Shown here: in pieces, positions 12,201 to 19,991 of the stretch
How the letters are laid out: each line of letters opens with the position of its first letter
Numbering within the stretch: position 1 is the first letter of the stretch
Origin: Phallusia mammillata
Lineage: Eukaryota
Length of the DNA stretch: 64,000 nt
Assembly (NCBI GenBank): GCA_965637545.1
Contig: OZ281494.1
Span: 30,814,001 to 30,878,000, forward strand
Direction: 5' to 3'
Position numbers and translations under genes: made by a program
The notes under the pieces: generated by a model
The model's database searches: none
What the model was told of the DNA's origin: nothing
Seen by the model: the letters and a program-made list of their open reading frames with translations, nothing else

Positions 12201-13943
12201 ATGGATAAATGTGCTTTTAGGACAGACCGCAATAAGAGAATGTTAACAGTATGATTACTTCTGTCAAAAACAGTACAAGGGTTGGCTGATCACCTACAGT
12301 CCTACAGTACTACACAGTACATGTCTCCAAAGCCCTATTGGATTGTAAACCATGCATTAATTAAAGTTAGCCTATATTGAAAGGTTATTGTTGCTTTTGA
12401 TGAGCCCTGTGTAATGTTCAAAATCTCCCTTCGTTGCAGGAGCATCTAGTGCTGAAAGAAAAGGTTGCTTCGAAGTTGCTAAGTTGCTCGGGGCGTCATC
12501 ACCCACAAGCCACGATGAGGGAAGCGAATCTGGAAACTTCTGGGCAGCTTTAGGTGGCAAAGGGGATTATGCGACTGACCCCCGTCCTGAGGTGGGTATC
12601 GCTGTGACTTTGGTTCAATGGTTCCCAAACTGTGGCACGCGAATACCTTTTACATTGTGTGCAAGCTTTCTTTAGATGACACGAGATCAAAATTATAAAA
12701 TTTACATGGCTTGGTTTCACTAATAATCTTCTTTCCTAGGTTGGGACACATTGTTTTTGTCCATTTTTTCCTTTTTCTATCTAACGCTGGTTTGTTTCAA
12801 CCGTTTGGTCATAAAAGAATGCTTAAAACATAATCAAAATGTACAGTTATGTTACTTCGTTTGTTTGTTTTCATTTTTATCATCGGTGGGCGGGCAACGC
12901 TTGAAAGCGTTATGCTCACAATGAGTTCGCCGTCGAGCTGTCTGTTTAGTTCAACCCATCGGGAACCACTTGGTTGGAGCAATGCCGCTTAAATTTCTTG
13001 CTCAGGGAAACACAAGCGACCGAGATAGGATTAGAATCAATGACCTTGTGATCACAAGTTAGTTATCCGAAGCTGATCCTCCTAAAGTTTGGCCCCGAAT
13101 GACCAAACGGTTTACCCACAGGTCTCCAAATCCTTAATTTTAATTGCAACTTAATACACAGAATGAGACGAAACCGCCACGTTTGTTTGAGTGCTCTGAT
13201 GCCACTGGTAACATTGTCGTGGAAGAGGTCGTTGGTGATTGGACCCAGGAAGATTTGACTGTTGACAACGTTATGCTGCTTGACGCATGGACTGTTCTTT
13301 ATGTGTGGATAGGTAATGTTATTCATGAGTTTTTGAAAGCTTGTAGCATTGCATACAAGTACAATAGAATAAACCTCGGTTAATCCGGATCTTTGCCCAG
13401 TTCGGACAAAACTCGAGGTATAAAGGATATTTAATGTGTGAAGACTTGAACTAATCGACATCAAATAATCCGGACCTTCGCCTAATTCATATATTTTTTG
13501 CTCCAAACCGGTTCGGATTTGCTGTACATACATTACTATTTGGTATTGGTTTGTCTGTTAATCTATTTCAAAAAGAAACTAGCGACGATTATATTTAACT
13601 GATTTAGTTTTCCCTAACTTAAATGTTCAATAATAAAAACAGGAAAGGATTCAAGTGATCAGGAAAAGGTCAAGGCAGTAGAAGAAGCTCAGGAATACTT
13701 GGAATCGGATCCCAGCGACCGTGACGGCTCGACTCCGATATACAAAATACATCAGGGCAAGGAACCGCTTTCATTCAAAGGCTTTTTCCAGGTACCTAAT
13801 TGGTGACATATAAAAAACTGTGAATGGGAATTTATAATATGATGTGTAGTCAGCGTAAACGGCCGCTGGTCAGTTTCTTAAATTAAGAGTGTTTTATCAG
13901 GCCTTTATTTTTTCAGGGTTGGGACCACGAGCTTTGGGCCTGA
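249..13943 (+). CDS. GSN: Gelsolin-family protein, six gelsolin domains, no headpiece, about 710 aa, 16 coding exons
   Basis: Exons 249-269, 408-549, 3442-3596, 6027-6191, 6404-6538, 6783-6887, 8521-8662, 9197-9340, 9826-9986, 10438-10665, 11360-11481, 11982-12115, 12440-12591, 13162-13312, 13643-13791, 13917-13943. All introns are GT-AG, phases are consistent, total 2133 nt. Motifs: [95 protein letters not shown]. The first 7-codon exon (MGRSTLT) is the least certain; orthology within the gelsolin/scinderin/villin family is not resolved. Confidence 0.93.
3199..3300 (+). mobile_element. Degenerate tRNA-derived SINE fragment
   Basis: gtcgtaagtttaaatcccaccacaggttagattt aligns with the B-box region of the copies at about 23570 and 55435. 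Confidence 0.45.
4090..4440 (-). mobile_element. Possible decayed Ty3/gypsy integrase fragment
   Basis: Frameshifted minus-strand peptides [26 protein letters not shown] and [16 protein letters not shown] resemble integrase core segments. Weak, by eye only. Confidence 0.3.
4678..5611. mobile_element. Non-autonomous TIR element flanked by TA
   Basis: Left TA|AGGTACCTGCAG..AAGGCCCA, right TGGGCCTTAT..TTCAGGTACCT|TA; internal GGGCCTTA repeats near 4858, 5223 and 5571. Confidence 0.55.
8913..9115. repeat. Imperfect inverted repeat made of two Penelope-like terminal fragments
   Basis: Arms about 8913-8990 and 9041-9115 are reverse complements (aagtttatagagctcttctg / cagaagagctctataaactt). Each arm contains a degenerate CTGAnGA..GAAAC core followed by AATAAA. 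Confidence 0.7.
10125..10420 (+). repeat. Degenerate minisatellite (unit about ACTGGATAAAATGGTT) in gelsolin intron 9
   Basis: More than 10 imperfect copies, ending shortly before the acceptor at 10437. Confidence 0.75.
11110..11289 (+). mobile_element. hAT-type MITE, copy 1
   Basis: Termini CAGTGGTGAGATT / GAATCCCACTACTG; body nearly identical to 11597-11756. Confidence 0.7.
11597..11756 (+). mobile_element. hAT-type MITE, copy 2 (left end missing)
   Basis: Direct-orientation copy of 11110-11289, ending GAATCCCACCACTG. Confidence 0.7.
12616..12971. mobile_element. Degenerate hAT MITE
   Basis: CAATGGTTCCCAAAC ... GGGAACCACTT termini; TSD unclear. Confidence 0.45.
12972..13062 (-). mobile_element. 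SINE fragment (B-box-like sequence plus deuterostome SINE core-like segment)
   Basis: Minus strand reads gattctaatcc..gcttgtgtttccctgagcaagaaatttaagcggcattgctcc. Confidence 0.4.
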
Positions 13944-14667
13944 AGAGTCAGGAAAGCCCAAACAAGTTGTACATACATACCCCCATCATGGCTTCTTCAT
14001 AGACAAGCTCGTGCAATTTTCGAATGCTAACCAGGCCTTTGAGAAGACGTACTTGAATGTTCCAGATATACCTTGTTTGAATTACAAAATGCAGTCTTAA
14101 CAAAACGTTTTTTGCACCTTATATAAAACATACTGCTGTGACTGTTGTTGTTTGTATGGAGCGAGCTTCCACAATACATTGGCCTGTCATGTCAAACTAT
14201 TTTAAGGAGCAAGTTTTCATTATTTCTCACTGTTTATGTCCAGTTAACAAGGGGTCATAAATGTGTACCAGGATTTTTCAGGTAAAGATGGTATAATGGC
14301 TTTAACATAGCAGAATGAAATATGATGGAAAAACATTAGGAATAAATACCATAGTAGTCATAGCATCTGTGTATTTTAAAATATATATATACATGTTAAA
14401 AGCCAATAAGACTTACAAAGTACTGCATATTACATACCGATTCAATATTGATTAGAATAAAAAAGTCTGCTATAATTTGAAAACTGCAATAAAATAAGGC
14501 AAGAAGTGGACAGAAACACTTTTACAGGAAAATAAAAAGGTAACATCTTAGAAACACATTATGAAAGAATTTTGATAAAGTTTTTGTGAGGTGGAACTCT
14601 TGATTTGGGGAAACTTTGCACCAAGGCTGATAAAATACTTTGTCCAATAGTCACAAACTGCATAAAG

Positions 14668-15807
14668 TCATAAGTATAGAATGTGGTGCTTTCCATTAGC
14701 ATTGTGTGTACTTGTTCCTTCTGGGCAGGTCCATTCATACCACATTTTAAGCTGTGGATATTTTACATCCAAAATTTGTTTACTTTTGACTTTCTCGCAT
14801 ATTCTTGAAATTGAAACTGTAACTGTTTGACAACTGGGTGTAAAATCATTAGTCAGTGGAAAAAAAGCAGACTCCCAAAAGTAGGTATTTTGTTTAGCAG
14901 TGGGTCTTGTATCTATGTACAATTCACCATACAGTTTGGCTCTAAAATACCCAGCCAGTCCTGTCCACGTAATGTCTTCAGTACCAGATTTTCTGTGAAA
15001 TATGACATTGTGTTTGGTATTGTCCAATCTTGAGGTACATGATGCAGTGTAGACATCAGCAATCTGGGTCAAAAAAGTTGTATCGCGAGGTAGCCCAAGA
15101 ACATGCAATTGCTCACTGGGATTTTCTTTGAAGTATTTTCCCAATGTTTTGGAATGAATAGCACAAATATATGTTGTATATGACTCTGGAATTGAGGTAC
15201 ACAAAGGTAAACCACTCTCTGAGTGCTTACCGAATAATTTAACACTTGCGGAAAGAATTTCTGCTACAAATTCATTGTCGCCAAAACTGCCAAAAAGTTC
15301 AGAAACAAACAAATCAACACATTTTGTTTTTGCAAGATTAGTTAGTTTTGAATCACAATGATTACTACTTATTGCACTTTCTATTTCTTTTACAGTTCTA
15401 ATGGCAATGGGTTCATGAATTACAACTTTTGAGTCACCATCAAATTTTTGTTTTAGTAAATTGTTGGCACATGTATTAACTTCCAAAACATGAACAGTAC
15501 CAGATATGTTAAACTCATTTAAGCACTCGTTACAAAAATCAACAAGTCTACCCCTTCCAGCACCTACGACCAATATGTTCAGGATATTTTTAGGGTCCCA
15601 TGATTTCAAACATAAGTGTATTGAAGTGTAGTACAAAAAGTACTTCGCTCTGTCCATCTCCATAGACTCGTATTCGATACCAAGCCAAGGCGGAAAAATA
15701 GGGTCTCGATTTTTTGTCGGTTGTAAAATCCCATTTCGATTTAACTCTGATGAATAGTCCGTCAAAAATAGCCTATGTGCTTCTTCTGTAAAAGCAGAGT
15801 AGTCCAT
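14668..15807 (-). CDS. Intronless PRMT5-like protein arginine methyltransferase (Rossmann and beta-barrel only, no N-terminal TIM barrel), 379 aa
   Basis: Single ORF with PRMT5 motifs: YESMEMDRAKY (cf. YEVFEKDPIKY), ILVVGAGRGRLV (motif I), VHVLEVN (post-I acid), DLFVSELFGSFGDNEF (double-E loop, 9-codon spacing), SIPESYT, GLAGYFRAKLY, YFWESAFFPL, WYEW, HNANGKHHIL. An in-frame stop lies 3 codons upstream of the ATG. Confidence 0.88.
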   Translation of the reverse strand: MDYSAFTEEAHRLFLTDYSSELNRNGILQPTKNRDPIFPPWLGIEYESMEMDRAKYFLYYTSIHLCLKSWDPKNILNILVVGAGRGRLVDFCNECLNEFNISGTVHVLEVNTCANNLLKQKFDGDSKVVIHEPIAIRTVKEIESAISSNHCDSKLTNLAKTKCVDLFVSELFGSFGDNEFVAEILSASVKLFGKHSESGLPLCTSIPESYTTYICAIHSKTLGKYFKENPSEQLHVLGLPRDTTFLTQIADVYTASCTSRLDNTKHNVIFHRKSGTEDITWTGLAGYFRAKLYGELYIDTRPTAKQNTYFWESAFFPLTNDFTPSCQTVTVSISRICEKVKSKQILDVKYPQLKMWYEWTCPEGTSTHNANGKHHILYL

Positions 15808-16190
15808 ACTCTTTTAATCATCCATACGTTTTCAGGCACGGCACTGTTATGCGGTAGTACTACTTTAAAGAATACTGCAATTATAAAACACAAATCAGAA
15901 AGTTTTCAGCGAAAACCCGGTGTATTTCCCTTCGGTGAAACATTTGACGTATACAGGTATTGCGAAACGTATACCATATTGTACCATAGGTGTTTAACCT
16001 TATTAGTAGCATATGCCTGCTAAATAAAATTTGCTAAAACCATTGCTGTCTTGATGTGTTTATACAAACAAAATTTAAACCTATTATTTAAAAAACGCTT
16101 GCTTACAACGGTTGATGCAACAATTGACCTTTAACCTTTGCTTTCTTCTTTCGACTTCAAGATGGCGAACATTGGTAAAAAATGAGGTTA
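15808..16190. promoter_or_regulatory. Putative bidirectional promoter between PRMT5-like (-) and RBM12 (+), including a probable RBM12 first exon
   Basis: Head-to-head arrangement. Pyrimidine run followed by CAAGATGGCG (YY1-like, 16158-16167). Candidate donors at 16175 and 16187; acceptor ttttttatag ends at 16720. Confidence 0.5.
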
Positions 16191-16748
16191 GCTGAAATGT
16201 TAAGTGAAACGTTTATGCACCTCTTTGGCAGTTAGATTTCAGATAGAAAATTAAGGTTATTTTGCGTTTCAACTTGTAACGACAATTGTAGAAAATAAGA
16301 CATGCAAACATCTGCAAAAACTGTACAAACATTTTGATTTTTCTGATAACTTTTTGTAATTTGTTTGTCTAACTTATCGTAAGTCGTAACCTGGGTAGGA
16401 GATGCGTTTTTTTTGTCAAGCTAGGGACTGCATTGCATCAATAATCAGAATAAACTAGAATTCCCAAGTATTTTCAATTTGAGTCATCTGATAAAGAGAA
16501 GTAAAACATGATTTGTTAATAATGATTAAATTTGCATGCAGATTTGTTGTCTTTGTCTGTCGCTTTTCAGCCAAATTTTAAAATAACCATTTCTTTAACT
16601 GTTTGTGTATATCTTTATTAGATCCTTTTTGACTTAAAGGAGTTTCTTTTACATAAGATTACAAATTTAAACTTTCCTAAAATTTTATGTAAGACTTTTT
16701 TAATGGCTATTTTTTTATAGCTTTCTTGGTTTGTTGCCTGTCAAAAAT

Positions 16749-19700
16749 ATGGCAACTGGTGTTGTAATTCGATTACGTAATTTGCCGCTTGTTGCTGGCA
16801 CAATTGATATTCGTCAATTTTTTGGTGGTCTTCGTATTCCTGATGGAGGTGTTCACATTATCGGTGGTGAAGAAGGTACAGCTTTTATATTATTTTCAAC
16901 TGATGAAGATGCACGACAGGCAATGATGCGCGATGGGCAGACTATAACAGGAATGCCTATCAAGTTGATGCTAAGCAGCCATTCAGAGATGAAAAGTGTT
17001 ATTGAGGACAGCCAAAGGGTTTGTGAAGAATTAAGAGGCCTCCGCCCACCAGAACCCCCTATTACTAACTTGTCCAGCCATTCATCAGCAGTTGGTAGAG
17101 CAGAATACCCACCACAACAACAAATCAGGCAATTTCATGCCAAACCTCCCAGTCCGGAGTTAATGCCTTCTTTGCCAACTGGCAATGATATGCATTTAGA
17201 AATAAAAGGGATGCCTTTTGATGTCGACGAGAGTGCAATAATGTACTTTTTTGCACCAATTCCCCTTATTGGCATAAGATTCATGGTCGATGAAGCTGGT
17301 AGACGAACTGGAGATGCTTTGGTAAAGTTTAAATCACCAATGGATCTTTATCAGGCAATGAAAAAAGACAGGACCTATTTTGGAAACAGGTATATTAAGT
17401 TGAATCCAATTGCAGATAGACAACCACAATTGCCACCAGCACCAATGTATGATCCACTGAGAGCAGTGGACAGAAAGCGCCCACTTTCACCATCTGAAGG
17501 CACCCCAAAACGCTCACGAGAGTTTTCGCCTTTACGCTCTGACAACTGTGTAGAAATTCGAGGTCTGCCATCCACTGCCAACTTTAAGTCTGTGGGTGAG
17601 TTTTTTACCAGACTAAGGTTTGCTGATGGGGGATTGTATGTAGAGACAGATGGAAAAGTTTGCAAAGGGCGGGCGTTTGTTGAATTTTTGGCCTATGCTG
17701 ATTTTAAAGAAGCTCTGTTAAAGGATGGTGACATGTTGAATGGAAAACAGGTCCGAGTAATCAGTTTGTCCAAGCAAAATATGTTGGAGCAAATCAGGAT
17801 TCACAAGAAACACATGAAGACCAAAAGAGAAGAGGAGTTTATGAGGGAAAAAGAGAAAAAGCTGCAAGAAAAAAAGATTAAAGAAGAACGAAAGCGAGAA
17901 CACCAGTTGAGGAAACAAAAGGAAATGGATGAATGGCTTAGAAGGCAACACCAAAAAGAAGAGGAGGAAAGAAAGAGAAGAGACATTGAAAAACAAATGC
18001 TTCTCAAGAGTATGGAGGACCAAAGAATGTATGATATTCACCACCAACAGCAACTTGAACAAAAAAGGCAGGCAGAGTTGCAGCACCTTGAAAACAGCAA
18101 GACGGACAGTAGTTCTTTAGCTGTACAAGCCACTATTAAAAAAGAAGAAACTGTTTCTGGTGCTGGTGAAATGGAAATAGAAGAAGTTGAGCAGACTTTA
18201 CCCACTACAAGTACTCCAGCATCAATGTCATTGCCACAACCACCAGTGTTTGGTGCATCTGGGGGCATTGTTGGTGCAGCAGCAATGCCATTTGTTGTCC
18301 CTGGAGCAGGCTTTCCATTACCGCCGATGCCACAAATACCTGGTGTTTTACCACCTTCTTTGCCACCTAACCTAAATCCTTCAGATTTTATGCCTCCAAA
18401 CATGGCAAATTTACCACCTCCACCTTTACCCACTGCTTCAGCCTTGCCACCACCTCCAACTCCACCCGTAATGGAGAATAAAGCAGATATTGCCACAACC
18501 ATCAATTCTGTGTCTGCCAGTGGAGAACCACCTAAACCAACTGAGTCTAAAGAAACCAATGGGGATGCTGTTGCTGCTGTTGAAGAAGTAAAAAATGAGT
18601 TGGAAGACTCTGTATATATCAGAATGGCCAATACACCTTTTCAAATAGCTGAAGATGACATAAAAAGATTTTTCAGTGATGTCAGTATTGCACCAAATGG
18701 AATCCAGTTTATAATGAAAAAGGGCATGCGTTCAGGGCATGTGTTTATTAAATGCACATCAGTAAATGATGCAAAACGTGCTGTTGTAAAGAATGATGAA
18801 CCCTTGTTAGGAAGAAATGTGCTCGTTCAAGCTTCAAACATGGACAAGTTTCAGGAAATATATTTTAGGCTCACAAAAGGAAATTATACACCAACATTTG
18901 ACAAAAGTAGTTCAGCACCAACTTTAGGGGACTCTGTAACTAAAAGAATTAAAAGTGACAATCTAACATGTATATGTGTGGGAAACCTACCATGGGACAC
19001 CAATGTTGGTGACATGTTTAATTTGTTTGGGGATTTAAAGATTATTAGAGAAAGCCTTGTTATTATGAGAGGCCTGGATCGAAAATGCACAGGTGAAGCA
19101 TACATGGAGCTTGACTCTGCCATGGAGTGTGTAAAAGCGGCAAACTTGCATAACATACTGGCAATCCGTGGAAACTCGATCAGAGTTCTTCCCCTGTCAA
19201 GGAATAACATGAGAAAAGACATAGAAAACCATGACAAAAGAATGAATGCCGAAATAACAAGGCACGTTTCAGACCCCCACCGCTCAATGGGCCCACCTCC
19301 TCGTGGTCCACCAAATCTTCCACCACCAAATGAAGCACAAATGTCTCGGATGCCTCCAATGTCAACCAGACCCGAGTCATCGCTACCACCATATCGTGAT
19401 GAACGAATGCATCATCCAAGGGATGGACCGCCAGGAATGCCCCCAAGGGATCTACCACCAATGTTTGGTCCAAGAGATATTCCGCCAGATGCTGGTCGTT
19501 ACCCACCAATACCTCTGCCACCAGGGTTGATGAAGGATGGCCTGCCGCCACCTCTTCCATTTGGTGATGGTAGAATGCCACCACCTGGCCACCCTGATTC
19601 TTTTATGCGCCCCCGGTCACCACCAACTCCAGAGGAACTGCTAAGACTTAGAGGCCCTGGTGGTCCACCATTTTATTTTTCTCCCCCTCCAGTAGGTGCT

Positions 19701-19991
19701 GGACCACCCCGCTTTCCTATGGGTGGACCACCATTGCCCCCGAACCCAGCCAAATTTGTCTCAGTTAAAATGGGAAATTTAAATTTTAAAGTTACTCAAG
19801 AGGACATAGTTGAGTTTTTTTGGAGTTTTGACCCGATACCTGACTCTGTGAGATTGATGTATAACAAATCAGGCAAACCCACAGGAGATGGATTAATATC
19901 ATTTCCAAATATTGATGCTGCTCGGGCTGCAATAGATCAACTTAAGGGCAAAAATCTGCGCCAACGCCCTATAAAGCTGTTTTTGCAGTAA
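16749..19991 (+). CDS. RBM12: RNA-binding motif protein 12 homolog, single coding exon, 1080 aa, six RRM-like domains, charged coiled coil and Pro-rich linkers
   Basis: N-terminus MATGVVIRLRNLPLVAGTIDIRQFFGGLRIPDGGVHIIGGEEGTAFILFSTDEDARQAMMR matches the RBM12/RBM12B N-terminal RRM. C-terminal RRM ends GKPTGDG..AARAAIDQLKGKNLRQRPIKLFLQ. ATG at 16749 in context aaaatATGG, downstream of the acceptor at 16720. Confidence 0.93.
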   Translation: MATGVVIRLRNLPLVAGTIDIRQFFGGLRIPDGGVHIIGGEEGTAFILFSTDEDARQAMMRDGQTITGMPIKLMLSSHSEMKSVIEDSQRVCEELRGLRPPEPPITNLSSHSSAVGRAEYPPQQQIRQFHAKPPSPELMPSLPTGNDMHLEIKGMPFDVDESAIMYFFAPIPLIGIRFMVDEAGRRTGDALVKFKSPMDLYQAMKKDRTYFGNRYIKLNPIADRQPQLPPAPMYDPLRAVDRKRPLSPSEGTPKRSREFSPLRSDNCVEIRGLPSTANFKSVGEFFTRLRFADGGLYVETDGKVCKGRAFVEFLAYADFKEALLKDGDMLNGKQVRVISLSKQNMLEQIRIHKKHMKTKREEEFMREKEKKLQEKKIKEERKREHQLRKQKEMDEWLRRQHQKEEEERKRRDIEKQMLLKSMEDQRMYDIHHQQQLEQKRQAELQHLENSKTDSSSLAVQATIKKEETVSGAGEMEIEEVEQTLPTTSTPASMSLPQPPVFGASGGIVGAAAMPFVVPGAGFPLPPMPQIPGVLPPSLPPNLNPSDFMPPNMANLPPPPLPTASALPPPPTPPVMENKADIATTINSVSASGEPPKPTESKETNGDAVAAVEEVKNELEDSVYIRMANTPFQIAEDDIKRFFSDVSIAPNGIQFIMKKGMRSGHVFIKCTSVNDAKRAVVKNDEPLLGRNVLVQASNMDKFQEIYFRLTKGNYTPTFDKSSSAPTLGDSVTKRIKSDNLTCICVGNLPWDTNVGDMFNLFGDLKIIRESLVIMRGLDRKCTGEAYMELDSAMECVKAANLHNILAIRGNSIRVLPLSRNNMRKDIENHDKRMNAEITRHVSDPHRSMGPPPRGPPNLPPPNEAQMSRMPPMSTRPESSLPPYRDERMHHPRDGPPGMPPRDLPPMFGPRDIPPDAGRYPPIPLPPGLMKDGLPPPLPFGDGRMPPPGHPDSFMRPRSPPTPEELLRLRGPGGPPFYFSPPPVGAGPPRFPMGGPPLPPNPAKFVSVKMGNLNFKVTQEDIVEFFWSFDPIPDSVRLMYNKSGKPTGDGLISFPNIDAARAAIDQLKGKNLRQRPIKLFLQ

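What the first reader, a model, noticed from the sequence alone, without database searches (positions are those of the whole stretch)
14668..15807. Stand-alone PRMT5-like enzyme with a natural Phe327-to-Met specificity switch and no TIM barrel
Seen: YESMEMDRAKY aligns without gaps to human PRMT5 Y324-EVFEKDPIK-Y334, placing Met49 (codon 15661-15663) at F327. Both double-E-loop glutamates (15298-15300, 15271-15273) and GAGRG are intact. The FSW loop reads YFW, the DMR motif is replaced by an insert of about 20 aa, and the protein starts about 45 residues before this helix. Knowledge: F327 (C. elegans F379) enforces symmetric dimethylation; type I PRMTs have Met there, and the engineered F-to-M mutant makes both symmetric and asymmetric products; the TIM barrel binds MEP50 and substrate adaptors and supports oligomerisation. 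Inference: a lineage-specific, adaptor-independent methyltransferase with changed product or substrate specificity, possibly non-histone or small-molecule. The lack of introns suggests retroposition or horizontal acquisition.
Basis: partly seen in the sequence, partly recalled or inferred. Interest (0 to 1): 0.85.

Follow-up and report, generated by a model that had tools for sequence, protein, structure and literature searches.

The report
Ancient barrel-less PRMT5 sister enzyme
This sea-squirt gene is an expressed, conserved member of an old and apparently unstudied sister family of the arginine methyltransferase PRMT5 that lacks PRMT5's partner-binding barrel and carries active-site residues more like those of the other main class of these enzymes, so it may make a different methyl mark.

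Summary

The gene is not lineage-specific. Relatives with the same architecture occur in other ascidians (Ciona, Styela), Nematostella, a choanoflagellate and Amoebozoa (Acanthamoeba, Balamuthia, Mastigamoeba). In a tree they sit apart from all canonical PRMT5s, and a recent tunicate or animal duplication is rejected (p-AU below 1e-60). Lack of introns does not discriminate, because the canonical PRMT5 and the neighbouring gene are also intronless.

Outside ascidians the family pairs Met/Leu with an HWE loop, the type I residue pair on a PRMT5 scaffold. Ascidians replaced the His. Product type is untested. I found no paper describing this clade.

The parts
14383..15894 (-). Extent of the mono-exonic mRNA as seen in transcriptome contigs (5' UTR up to 87 nt, 3' UTR about 145-285 nt)
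   Evidence: X1 contig 14524..15894 (whole contig, 0 differences), X5 14383..15844, X4 14491..15876, X10 in three pieces. No joints and no loose ends. Zero depth in 13920-14287 and 15944-16679.
14668..15807 (-). Coding sequence, 379 aa plus stop
   Evidence: 100% identical to the UniRef entry 'Protein arginine N-methyltransferase 5-like', Phallusia mammillata.
15673..15807 (-). Family-specific N-terminal segment (residues 1-45): a helix, then G.L.P[ST].N..P..PP. It takes the place of the PRMT5 TIM-to-Rossmann linker with its PLxxN motif.
   Evidence: Alignments. Model helix 3-25. Model residue 16 maps to human residue 295.
15238..15678 (-). Rossmann-fold catalytic domain (residues 44-190)
   Evidence: PF05185, E 4e-19; fold match.
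15661..15663 (-). Met49 codon, at the position of human PRMT5 F327 and PRMT1 M48
   Evidence: Met in 11 of 13 ascidian sequences (Ile in P0011, Leu in P0012). Met/Leu/Ile/Val, never Phe, in the wider family.
15550..15564 (-). Motif I G82-A-G-R-G86 (SAM binding)
   Evidence: G82, G84 and G86 are invariant.
15325..15393 (-). Family-wide two-helix insert (residues about 139-161) after strand beta-4, where canonical PRMT5 has DMR followed by a short loop
   Evidence: Model helices 139-147 and 153-161. Spacing 87 against 70 residues.
15271..15300 (-). Double-E loop S-E170-LFGSFGDN-E179
   Evidence: E170, S174 and E179 are invariant.
14683..15183 (-). C-terminal beta-barrel (residues 209-375)
   Evidence: PF17286, E 3e-12.
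14872..14883 (-). Y309-F310-W311-E312 loop, equivalent to PRMT5 F-S578-W-F and the type I T-H293-W loop
   Evidence: W and E are invariant in the family. Position 310 is His in all non-ascidian members and Phe/Tyr/Ser in ascidians.

Best explanation
The gene encodes the Phallusia ortholog of an old, uncharacterised sister clade of PRMT5. The protein has the PRMT5 Rossmann domain and beta-barrel. In place of the TIM barrel it has a short conserved N-terminal helix and linker, and it carries an extra two-helix insert. It is transcribed as a single-exon mRNA and evolves under purifying selection. Every residue needed to bind SAM and the substrate guanidinium is kept (motif I, the post-I Glu, K55, Y46/Y56, both double-E glutamates, W311), so it is most likely an active protein arginine methyltransferase (inferred). 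Without the TIM barrel it cannot dock MEP50 or the adaptors pICln, RIOK1 and COPR5 in the way PRMT5 does (inferred). The two positions that separate type I from type II chemistry are not of PRMT5 type. Position 49 is Met (the type I state). Position 310 is His in the wider family (the type I state) and Phe/Tyr/Ser in ascidians. I therefore expect a product spectrum not restricted to symmetric dimethylarginine, meaning MMA and/or ADMA, possibly mixed (inferred, untested). The clade predates animals. It is retained in Amoebozoa, choanoflagellates, cnidarians and ascidians and is not seen among named vertebrate, arthropod, fungal or plant proteins.
Against: No biochemical data exist. F327M PRMT5 still makes SDMA, and a canonical Entamoeba PRMT5 naturally has Ile at this position (PMC11721204), so residue 49 alone does not fix the product. 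Met is not invariant. Ascidians have lost the His, so their active site is neither type I nor type II. Support for the deep split is moderate, there is a single very long outgroup branch, and several rows have skewed composition. Most non-ascidian members come from unnamed assemblies, so the distribution and the claimed absences are incomplete. The oligomeric state is unknown: PRMTs act as dimers, PRMT5's dimer contact uses the TIM barrel, and the dimer test gave no answer. The RNA nature of the runs is inferred from coverage pattern, not from their records.
Confidence: 0.72

Rival explanations
1. It is functionally an ordinary type II enzyme. Despite Met49 it makes MMA and SDMA like PRMT5, and only the mode of substrate recruitment differs.
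For: The overall fold and most active-site residues are of PRMT5 type: K55 = K333 and S174 = S439, not the type I Arg/Tyr. The F327M mutant keeps SDMA activity. Canonical PRMT5s with natural Met or Ile at this position exist.
Against: Phe is never seen at position 49 in about 49 family members, while it is near-universal in canonical PRMT5. The ancestral partner residue is His, as in type I enzymes. F580 is replaced by an invariant Glu.
Confidence: 0.2
2. It is a recent tunicate-specific derivative of PRMT5, a 5'-truncated retrocopy that diverged fast.
For: The gene is intronless in all ascidians checked. It begins just after the TIM barrel, as a 5'-truncated retrocopy would. Its branch is long.
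Against: AU tests reject it (p 1e-76 and 3e-65). Non-tunicate proteins share the N-terminal segment, the insert, the non-Phe residue and the WE loop. The parental canonical gene is itself intronless, so intron absence does not discriminate.
Confidence: 0.02
3. The ascidian ancestor acquired the gene horizontally from a protist that carried this family.
For: The distribution is patchy and the gene is intronless. In the free tree the ascidian clade does not sit next to the Nematostella-type sequences.
Against: Grouping ascidians with the Nematostella-type animal sequences is not rejected (dlnL 15.6, p-AU 0.145). Local G+C (0.35) matches the flanks. Synteny with the RRM gene is shared by Phallusia and Ciona. 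Neighbouring native genes are also intronless.
Confidence: 0.08
4. It is a catalytically dead scaffold, or it methylates something other than protein arginine (a small molecule or another residue).
For: The DMR adenine-contact motif is absent, the insert lies near the cofactor site, and the substrate-loop residues are altered. No dimer could be predicted.
Against: Motif I, the post-I Glu109, K55, both double-E glutamates and W311 are invariant across hundreds of millions of years. Pseudoenzymes usually lose these residues. The double-E loop is specific to guanidinium binding (established PRMT knowledge).
Confidence: 0.08

Closest known systems
PRMT5 / Hsl7 / Skb1 (type II protein arginine methyltransferase; Pfam PF17285 + PF05185 + PF17286)
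   Different: There is no TIM barrel, so no MEP50 or adaptor docking site and no PRMT5-type dimer contact. Met replaces F327. [Y/F][H/F/S/Y]WE replaces FSWF. PLxxN and DMR are not conserved. There is an extra insert of about 17 aa. In the tree it forms a separate clade outside the canonical PRMT5s of all eukaryotic groups sampled.
Type I PRMTs (PRMT1, 3, 4, 6, 8)
   Same: Similar size (about 350-400 aa core with no large N-terminal domain required), Met at the PRMT1 M48 position and, in non-ascidian members, His before the loop Trp as in the THW loop.
Engineered PRMT5 F327M (C. elegans F379M) and PRMT1 M48F / M48F+H293S mutants
   Same: The family is a natural counterpart of the residue swaps shown to alter the ADMA/SDMA outcome (PMC6272650, PMC8619983).
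   Different: Those are point mutants of canonical enzymes. Here the residues sit in a diverged scaffold with further changes (E312, the insert), so the outcome cannot be read off the mutants.

Membership tests
PRMT5 (canonical type II, Hsl7/Skb1) | PRMT5 catalytic Rossmann domain with motif I and the double-E loop | tested here: met
   PF05185 at 69.5 bits against a cut-off of 22.9. GAGRG, E170 and E179 are present.
PRMT5 (canonical type II, Hsl7/Skb1) | PRMT5-type C-terminal beta-barrel | tested here: met
PRMT5 (canonical type II, Hsl7/Skb1) | N-terminal TIM barrel (PF17285) that binds MEP50 and adaptors | tested here: not met
   No PF17285 hit. The mRNA has no upstream exon. The only TIM barrel in the genome is at C4:14074863-14075609 in the canonical gene.
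PRMT5 (canonical type II, Hsl7/Skb1) | Phe at the F327 position | tested here: not met
   Met49. Phe is found in none of the family members.
PRMT5 (canonical type II, Hsl7/Skb1) | FSW loop and PLxxN motif | tested here: not met
   The loop reads YFWE and the linker reads PIFPP. The motifs are as defined in PMC11721204 and PMC12925635.
PRMT5 (canonical type II, Hsl7/Skb1) | Branches within the canonical PRMT5 clade | tested here: not met
   It falls in a separate clade. Forced union with tunicate or animal PRMT5 is rejected.
PRMT5 (canonical type II, Hsl7/Skb1) | Makes symmetric dimethylarginine | not testable with these tools
   This needs an in vitro assay with product analysis.
Type I PRMT | Met at the PRMT1 M48 position | tested here: met
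   Met49. The equivalence F327 = M48 is stated in PMC6272650.
Type I PRMT | THW loop with the catalytic-site His | tested here: not met
   Phallusia has F310. His is present in the non-ascidian members of the family.
Type I PRMT | Closest fold and sequence family is type I | tested here: not met
TIM-less PRMT5 sister clade (defined here) | Starts about 45 residues before the YE.xE.D..KY helix, with the conserved N-terminal helix and G.L.P..N..P..PP linker | tested here: met
TIM-less PRMT5 sister clade (defined here) | Non-aromatic residue at position 49, a W-E loop, and an insert of about 17 aa before the double-E strand | tested here: met

The most novel reading that the evidence does not exclude
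This clade is a previously unrecognised, pre-metazoan lineage of protein arginine methyltransferases: a PRMT5-fold enzyme that works without a TIM barrel or MEP50 and, through its Met plus His-Trp-Glu active site, makes asymmetric dimethylarginine or only monomethylarginine. In ascidians the His was replaced, with coupled changes at position 49 (Met with Phe/Tyr; Ile/Leu with Ser), which would shift the product again. It would have been missed because vertebrates and the standard invertebrate, fungal and plant models lack it.
Probability: 0.3. Interest if true: 0.75.

Novelty: new variant of a known kind. Interest (0 to 1): 0.6.

Why it matters
PRMTs are usually counted as nine families, and PRMT5 is taken as the main symmetric dimethylase, dependent on its TIM barrel and MEP50. 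This would be a conserved sister lineage that lacks the barrel and naturally carries the residue states that mutagenesis links to the ADMA/SDMA choice. It offers a natural experiment on how product specificity and oligomerisation are encoded, and an arginine methyltransferase in tunicates and cnidarians with unknown substrates. Ciona and Phallusia are tractable embryological models, so function can be tested directly.

Tried and rejected
- Homodimer prediction gave no verdict. It is not evidence either way.
- dN/dS on near-identical allelic pairs (L008/L010, L011/L012) had too few differences (3 and 11 codons) to be informative. Diverged pairs were used instead, where dS is saturated in most comparisons, so omega values are rough.
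- The listing of cluster members gave no organism names for the unnamed ascidian-like proteins.
- The ESM Atlas has no cluster of its own for the family. The nearest clusters are canonical PRMT5.
- Literature searches for a described TIM-less PRMT5 paralog found none. The protozoan PRMT5s reviewed (Plasmodium, Toxoplasma, Entamoeba) keep the TIM barrel. The library lacks most subscription-journal papers, so this is absence of evidence only.
- The sigma-70 promoter/terminator scan is meaningless for a eukaryote and was ignored.
- The search of earlier findings returned only this same first-stage note and an unrelated hammerhead note.
- I could not read model coordinates, so the distance between residues 49 and 310 was not measured.

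Full report
**What is there.** The minus-strand ORF at 14668..15807 encodes 379 residues. An in-frame stop lies two codons upstream of the ATG. Pfam assigns the PRMT5 catalytic domain (PF05185, E 4e-19, residues 44-190) and the PRMT5 C-terminal barrel (PF17286, E 3e-12, residues 209-375), but not the PRMT5 TIM barrel. phmmer against PDB sequences finds human, Xenopus and C. elegans PRMT5. It aligns I44-EYESM49-EMDRAKY without gaps to QTYEVF327EKDPIKY.

**Organism and gene structure.** The protein is 100% identical to a UniRef entry from the ascidian Phallusia mammillata. Contigs from four independent studies were laid on 13000-18500, and they behave as transcriptomes:
- Depth is zero in both intergenic flanks (13920-14287 and 15944-16679).
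- A neighbouring gene shows a GT..AG joint (13310 to 13641).
- The divergent RRM gene carries loose letters GATTCTATTTGAATA just before 16719. By my recollection of the Ciona spliced leader, this is the ascidian trans-spliced leader.

For the gene of interest, whole contigs lie colinear with the genome (14524..15894, 14383..15844, 14491..15876), with no joint and no loose end. So this is an expressed single-exon mRNA of about 1.4-1.5 kb with no upstream exon.

The genome holds a canonical PRMT5 on another contig. It is a single 648-aa ORF with YETFEKDPIKY, GAGRGPL, SELLGSFGDNE and FSWFP. That gene contains the only PRMT5 TIM barrel in the 240-Mb assembly. A third weak hit, L003, is a type I enzyme that looks like PRMT3.

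**Not lineage-specific.** Proteins of about 380 aa with the same architecture occur in Ciona intestinalis, Styela clava and a dozen unnamed ascidian-like assemblies, at 36-64% identity. The Ciona gene is also a single exon and also lies next to a large RRM-protein gene.

A profile of the ascidian proteins was searched exhaustively against 1.84 billion representatives. It found an intermediate tier at 150-245 bits, above canonical PRMT5s (143 bits or less, matching only from profile position 35 at about residue 300 of the protein). Named members of this tier are:
- Balamuthia mandrillaris, Acanthamoeba castellanii and Mastigamoeba balamuthi (Amoebozoa);
- Helgoeca nana (choanoflagellate);
- Nematostella vectensis.

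They share four features with the ascidian proteins:
- the N-terminal helix and linker;
- a non-aromatic residue at position 49;
- an insert of about 17 residues before the double-E strand (spacing 87 against 70);
- a Trp-Glu loop.

**Phylogeny.** The tree used IQ-TREE with LG+C20, 50 sequences, 370 columns and the genome's type I enzyme (L003) as outgroup.
- Canonical PRMT5s from animals (including Phallusia), fungi, Amoebozoa, plants, green algae, oomycetes and others fall on one side (support 85/59).
- The short family falls on the other (82/72), across long internal branches.
- The ascidian clade is strongly supported (98/99).
- Forcing the ascidian clade to join the Phallusia canonical PRMT5 costs 154 log-likelihood units (p-AU 1e-76).
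- Forcing it to join all animal canonical PRMT5s costs 153 units (p-AU 3e-65).
- Grouping the ascidians with the Nematostella-type sequences is not rejected (p-AU 0.145), so vertical descent with losses is compatible with the data.

The Nematostella gene has introns (2411 nt for a 1482-nt coding sequence). The ascidian lack of introns is therefore a loss on that line, and it is shared by the canonical PRMT5 and the neighbouring RRM gene. It is no sign of foreign origin. Caveats are a single very long outgroup branch, composition-skewed rows, and moderate support for the deep split.

**Selection.** Wherever dS can be computed, dN is far below it. For P0004 against P0005, dN is 0.285, dS 1.41 and omega 0.20; other pairs give 0.11-0.31 with saturated dS. 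Catalytic residues are invariant across the family.

**Active site.** PMC6272650 lists the residues that distinguish PRMT5 from type I enzymes: F327/K333/S439/S578 against M48/R54/Y148/H293. It also reports that F327M makes both ADMA and SDMA. PMC8619983 reports that PRMT1 M48F enables SDMA formation and that M48F+H293S makes SDMA predominant.

| Position (PRMT5 / type I) | This protein | Wider family |
|---|---|---|
| F327 / M48 | M49 (type I state) | Met, Leu, Ile or Val; never Phe |
| K333 / R54 | K55 (PRMT5 state) | Lys, near-invariant (one exception in the table) |
| S439 / Y148 | S174 (PRMT5 state) | Ser, or Cys/Thr in some members |
| S578 / H293 | F310 (neither state) | His in every non-ascidian member; Phe, Tyr or Ser in ascidians |
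| F580 / (Lys in THWKQ) | E312 | Glu, invariant |

The family thus began with the type I pair (Met plus His) on a PRMT5 scaffold, and ascidians later replaced the His. Within ascidians the two positions change together: Met goes with Phe/Tyr, and Ile/Leu goes with Ser. The sister sequences P0012 (Leu, Ser) and P0013 (Met, Phe) differ at both sites. This fits two residues that pack against each other, but I could not measure it in the model.

The signal from residue 49 alone is limited. Three canonical, TIM-bearing PRMT5s carry Met naturally, and Entamoeba PRMT5 carries Ile.

**Mechanism proposed.**
- Shown: the architecture, the expression, the conservation and the residue states.
- Inferred: the protein is an active SAM-dependent arginine methyltransferase. 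It acts without MEP50 or the PRMT5 adaptors. Its product is not confined to SDMA.
- Unknown: substrates, oligomeric state and product type.

**Novelty.** The sequence is in databases under automatic names ('PRMT5-like', 'HSL7', 'methyltransferase, putative'). I found no paper that recognises or characterises the clade. The searchable library is incomplete, so this is not proof. I rate it a new variant of a known kind.

Noticed in passing
window 16731..19991 (+), trans-splice site at about 16719: A divergent neighbour encodes a 1086-aa multi-RRM, proline-rich protein in one uninterrupted ORF. Transcript contigs start at 16719 with the loose letters GATTCTATTTGAATA, which looks like the ascidian spliced leader. 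Ciona has an 1158-aa RRM protein next to its ortholog of the methyltransferase, so local synteny is conserved.
   Followed up: partly
L001 616..2562 (G000:C4, about 14.075 Mb): The canonical PRMT5 of Phallusia, TIM barrel included, is a single intronless ORF of about 640 aa. Several long genes here lack introns, which weakens intron absence as an argument for retroposition or transfer.
   Followed up: partly
proteins P0076, P0093, P0122 (also P0137, P0165): A few full-length, TIM-bearing canonical PRMT5s from unnamed organisms naturally carry Met (or Leu/Ile) at the F327 position while keeping FSWF. The published Entamoeba invadens PRMT5 has Ile there.
   Followed up: no
window 13201..13792, and 13363..13489: A spliced transcript has a GT..AG intron at 13311-13640. 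Inside that intron, short stretches are matched by high-depth contigs that run on into unrelated sequence, as a dispersed repeat would.
   Followed up: no
P0031 (696 aa, unnamed; groups with the choanoflagellate-like members): One family member continues into a C-terminal region of about 290 residues that may be a further domain or a fused gene model. I did not scan it against Pfam.
   Followed up: no
P0302 (Acanthamoeba castellanii, 381 aa): The deposited model lacks the whole double-E loop stretch in the alignment, probably a mis-called intron rather than a real deletion.
   Followed up: no
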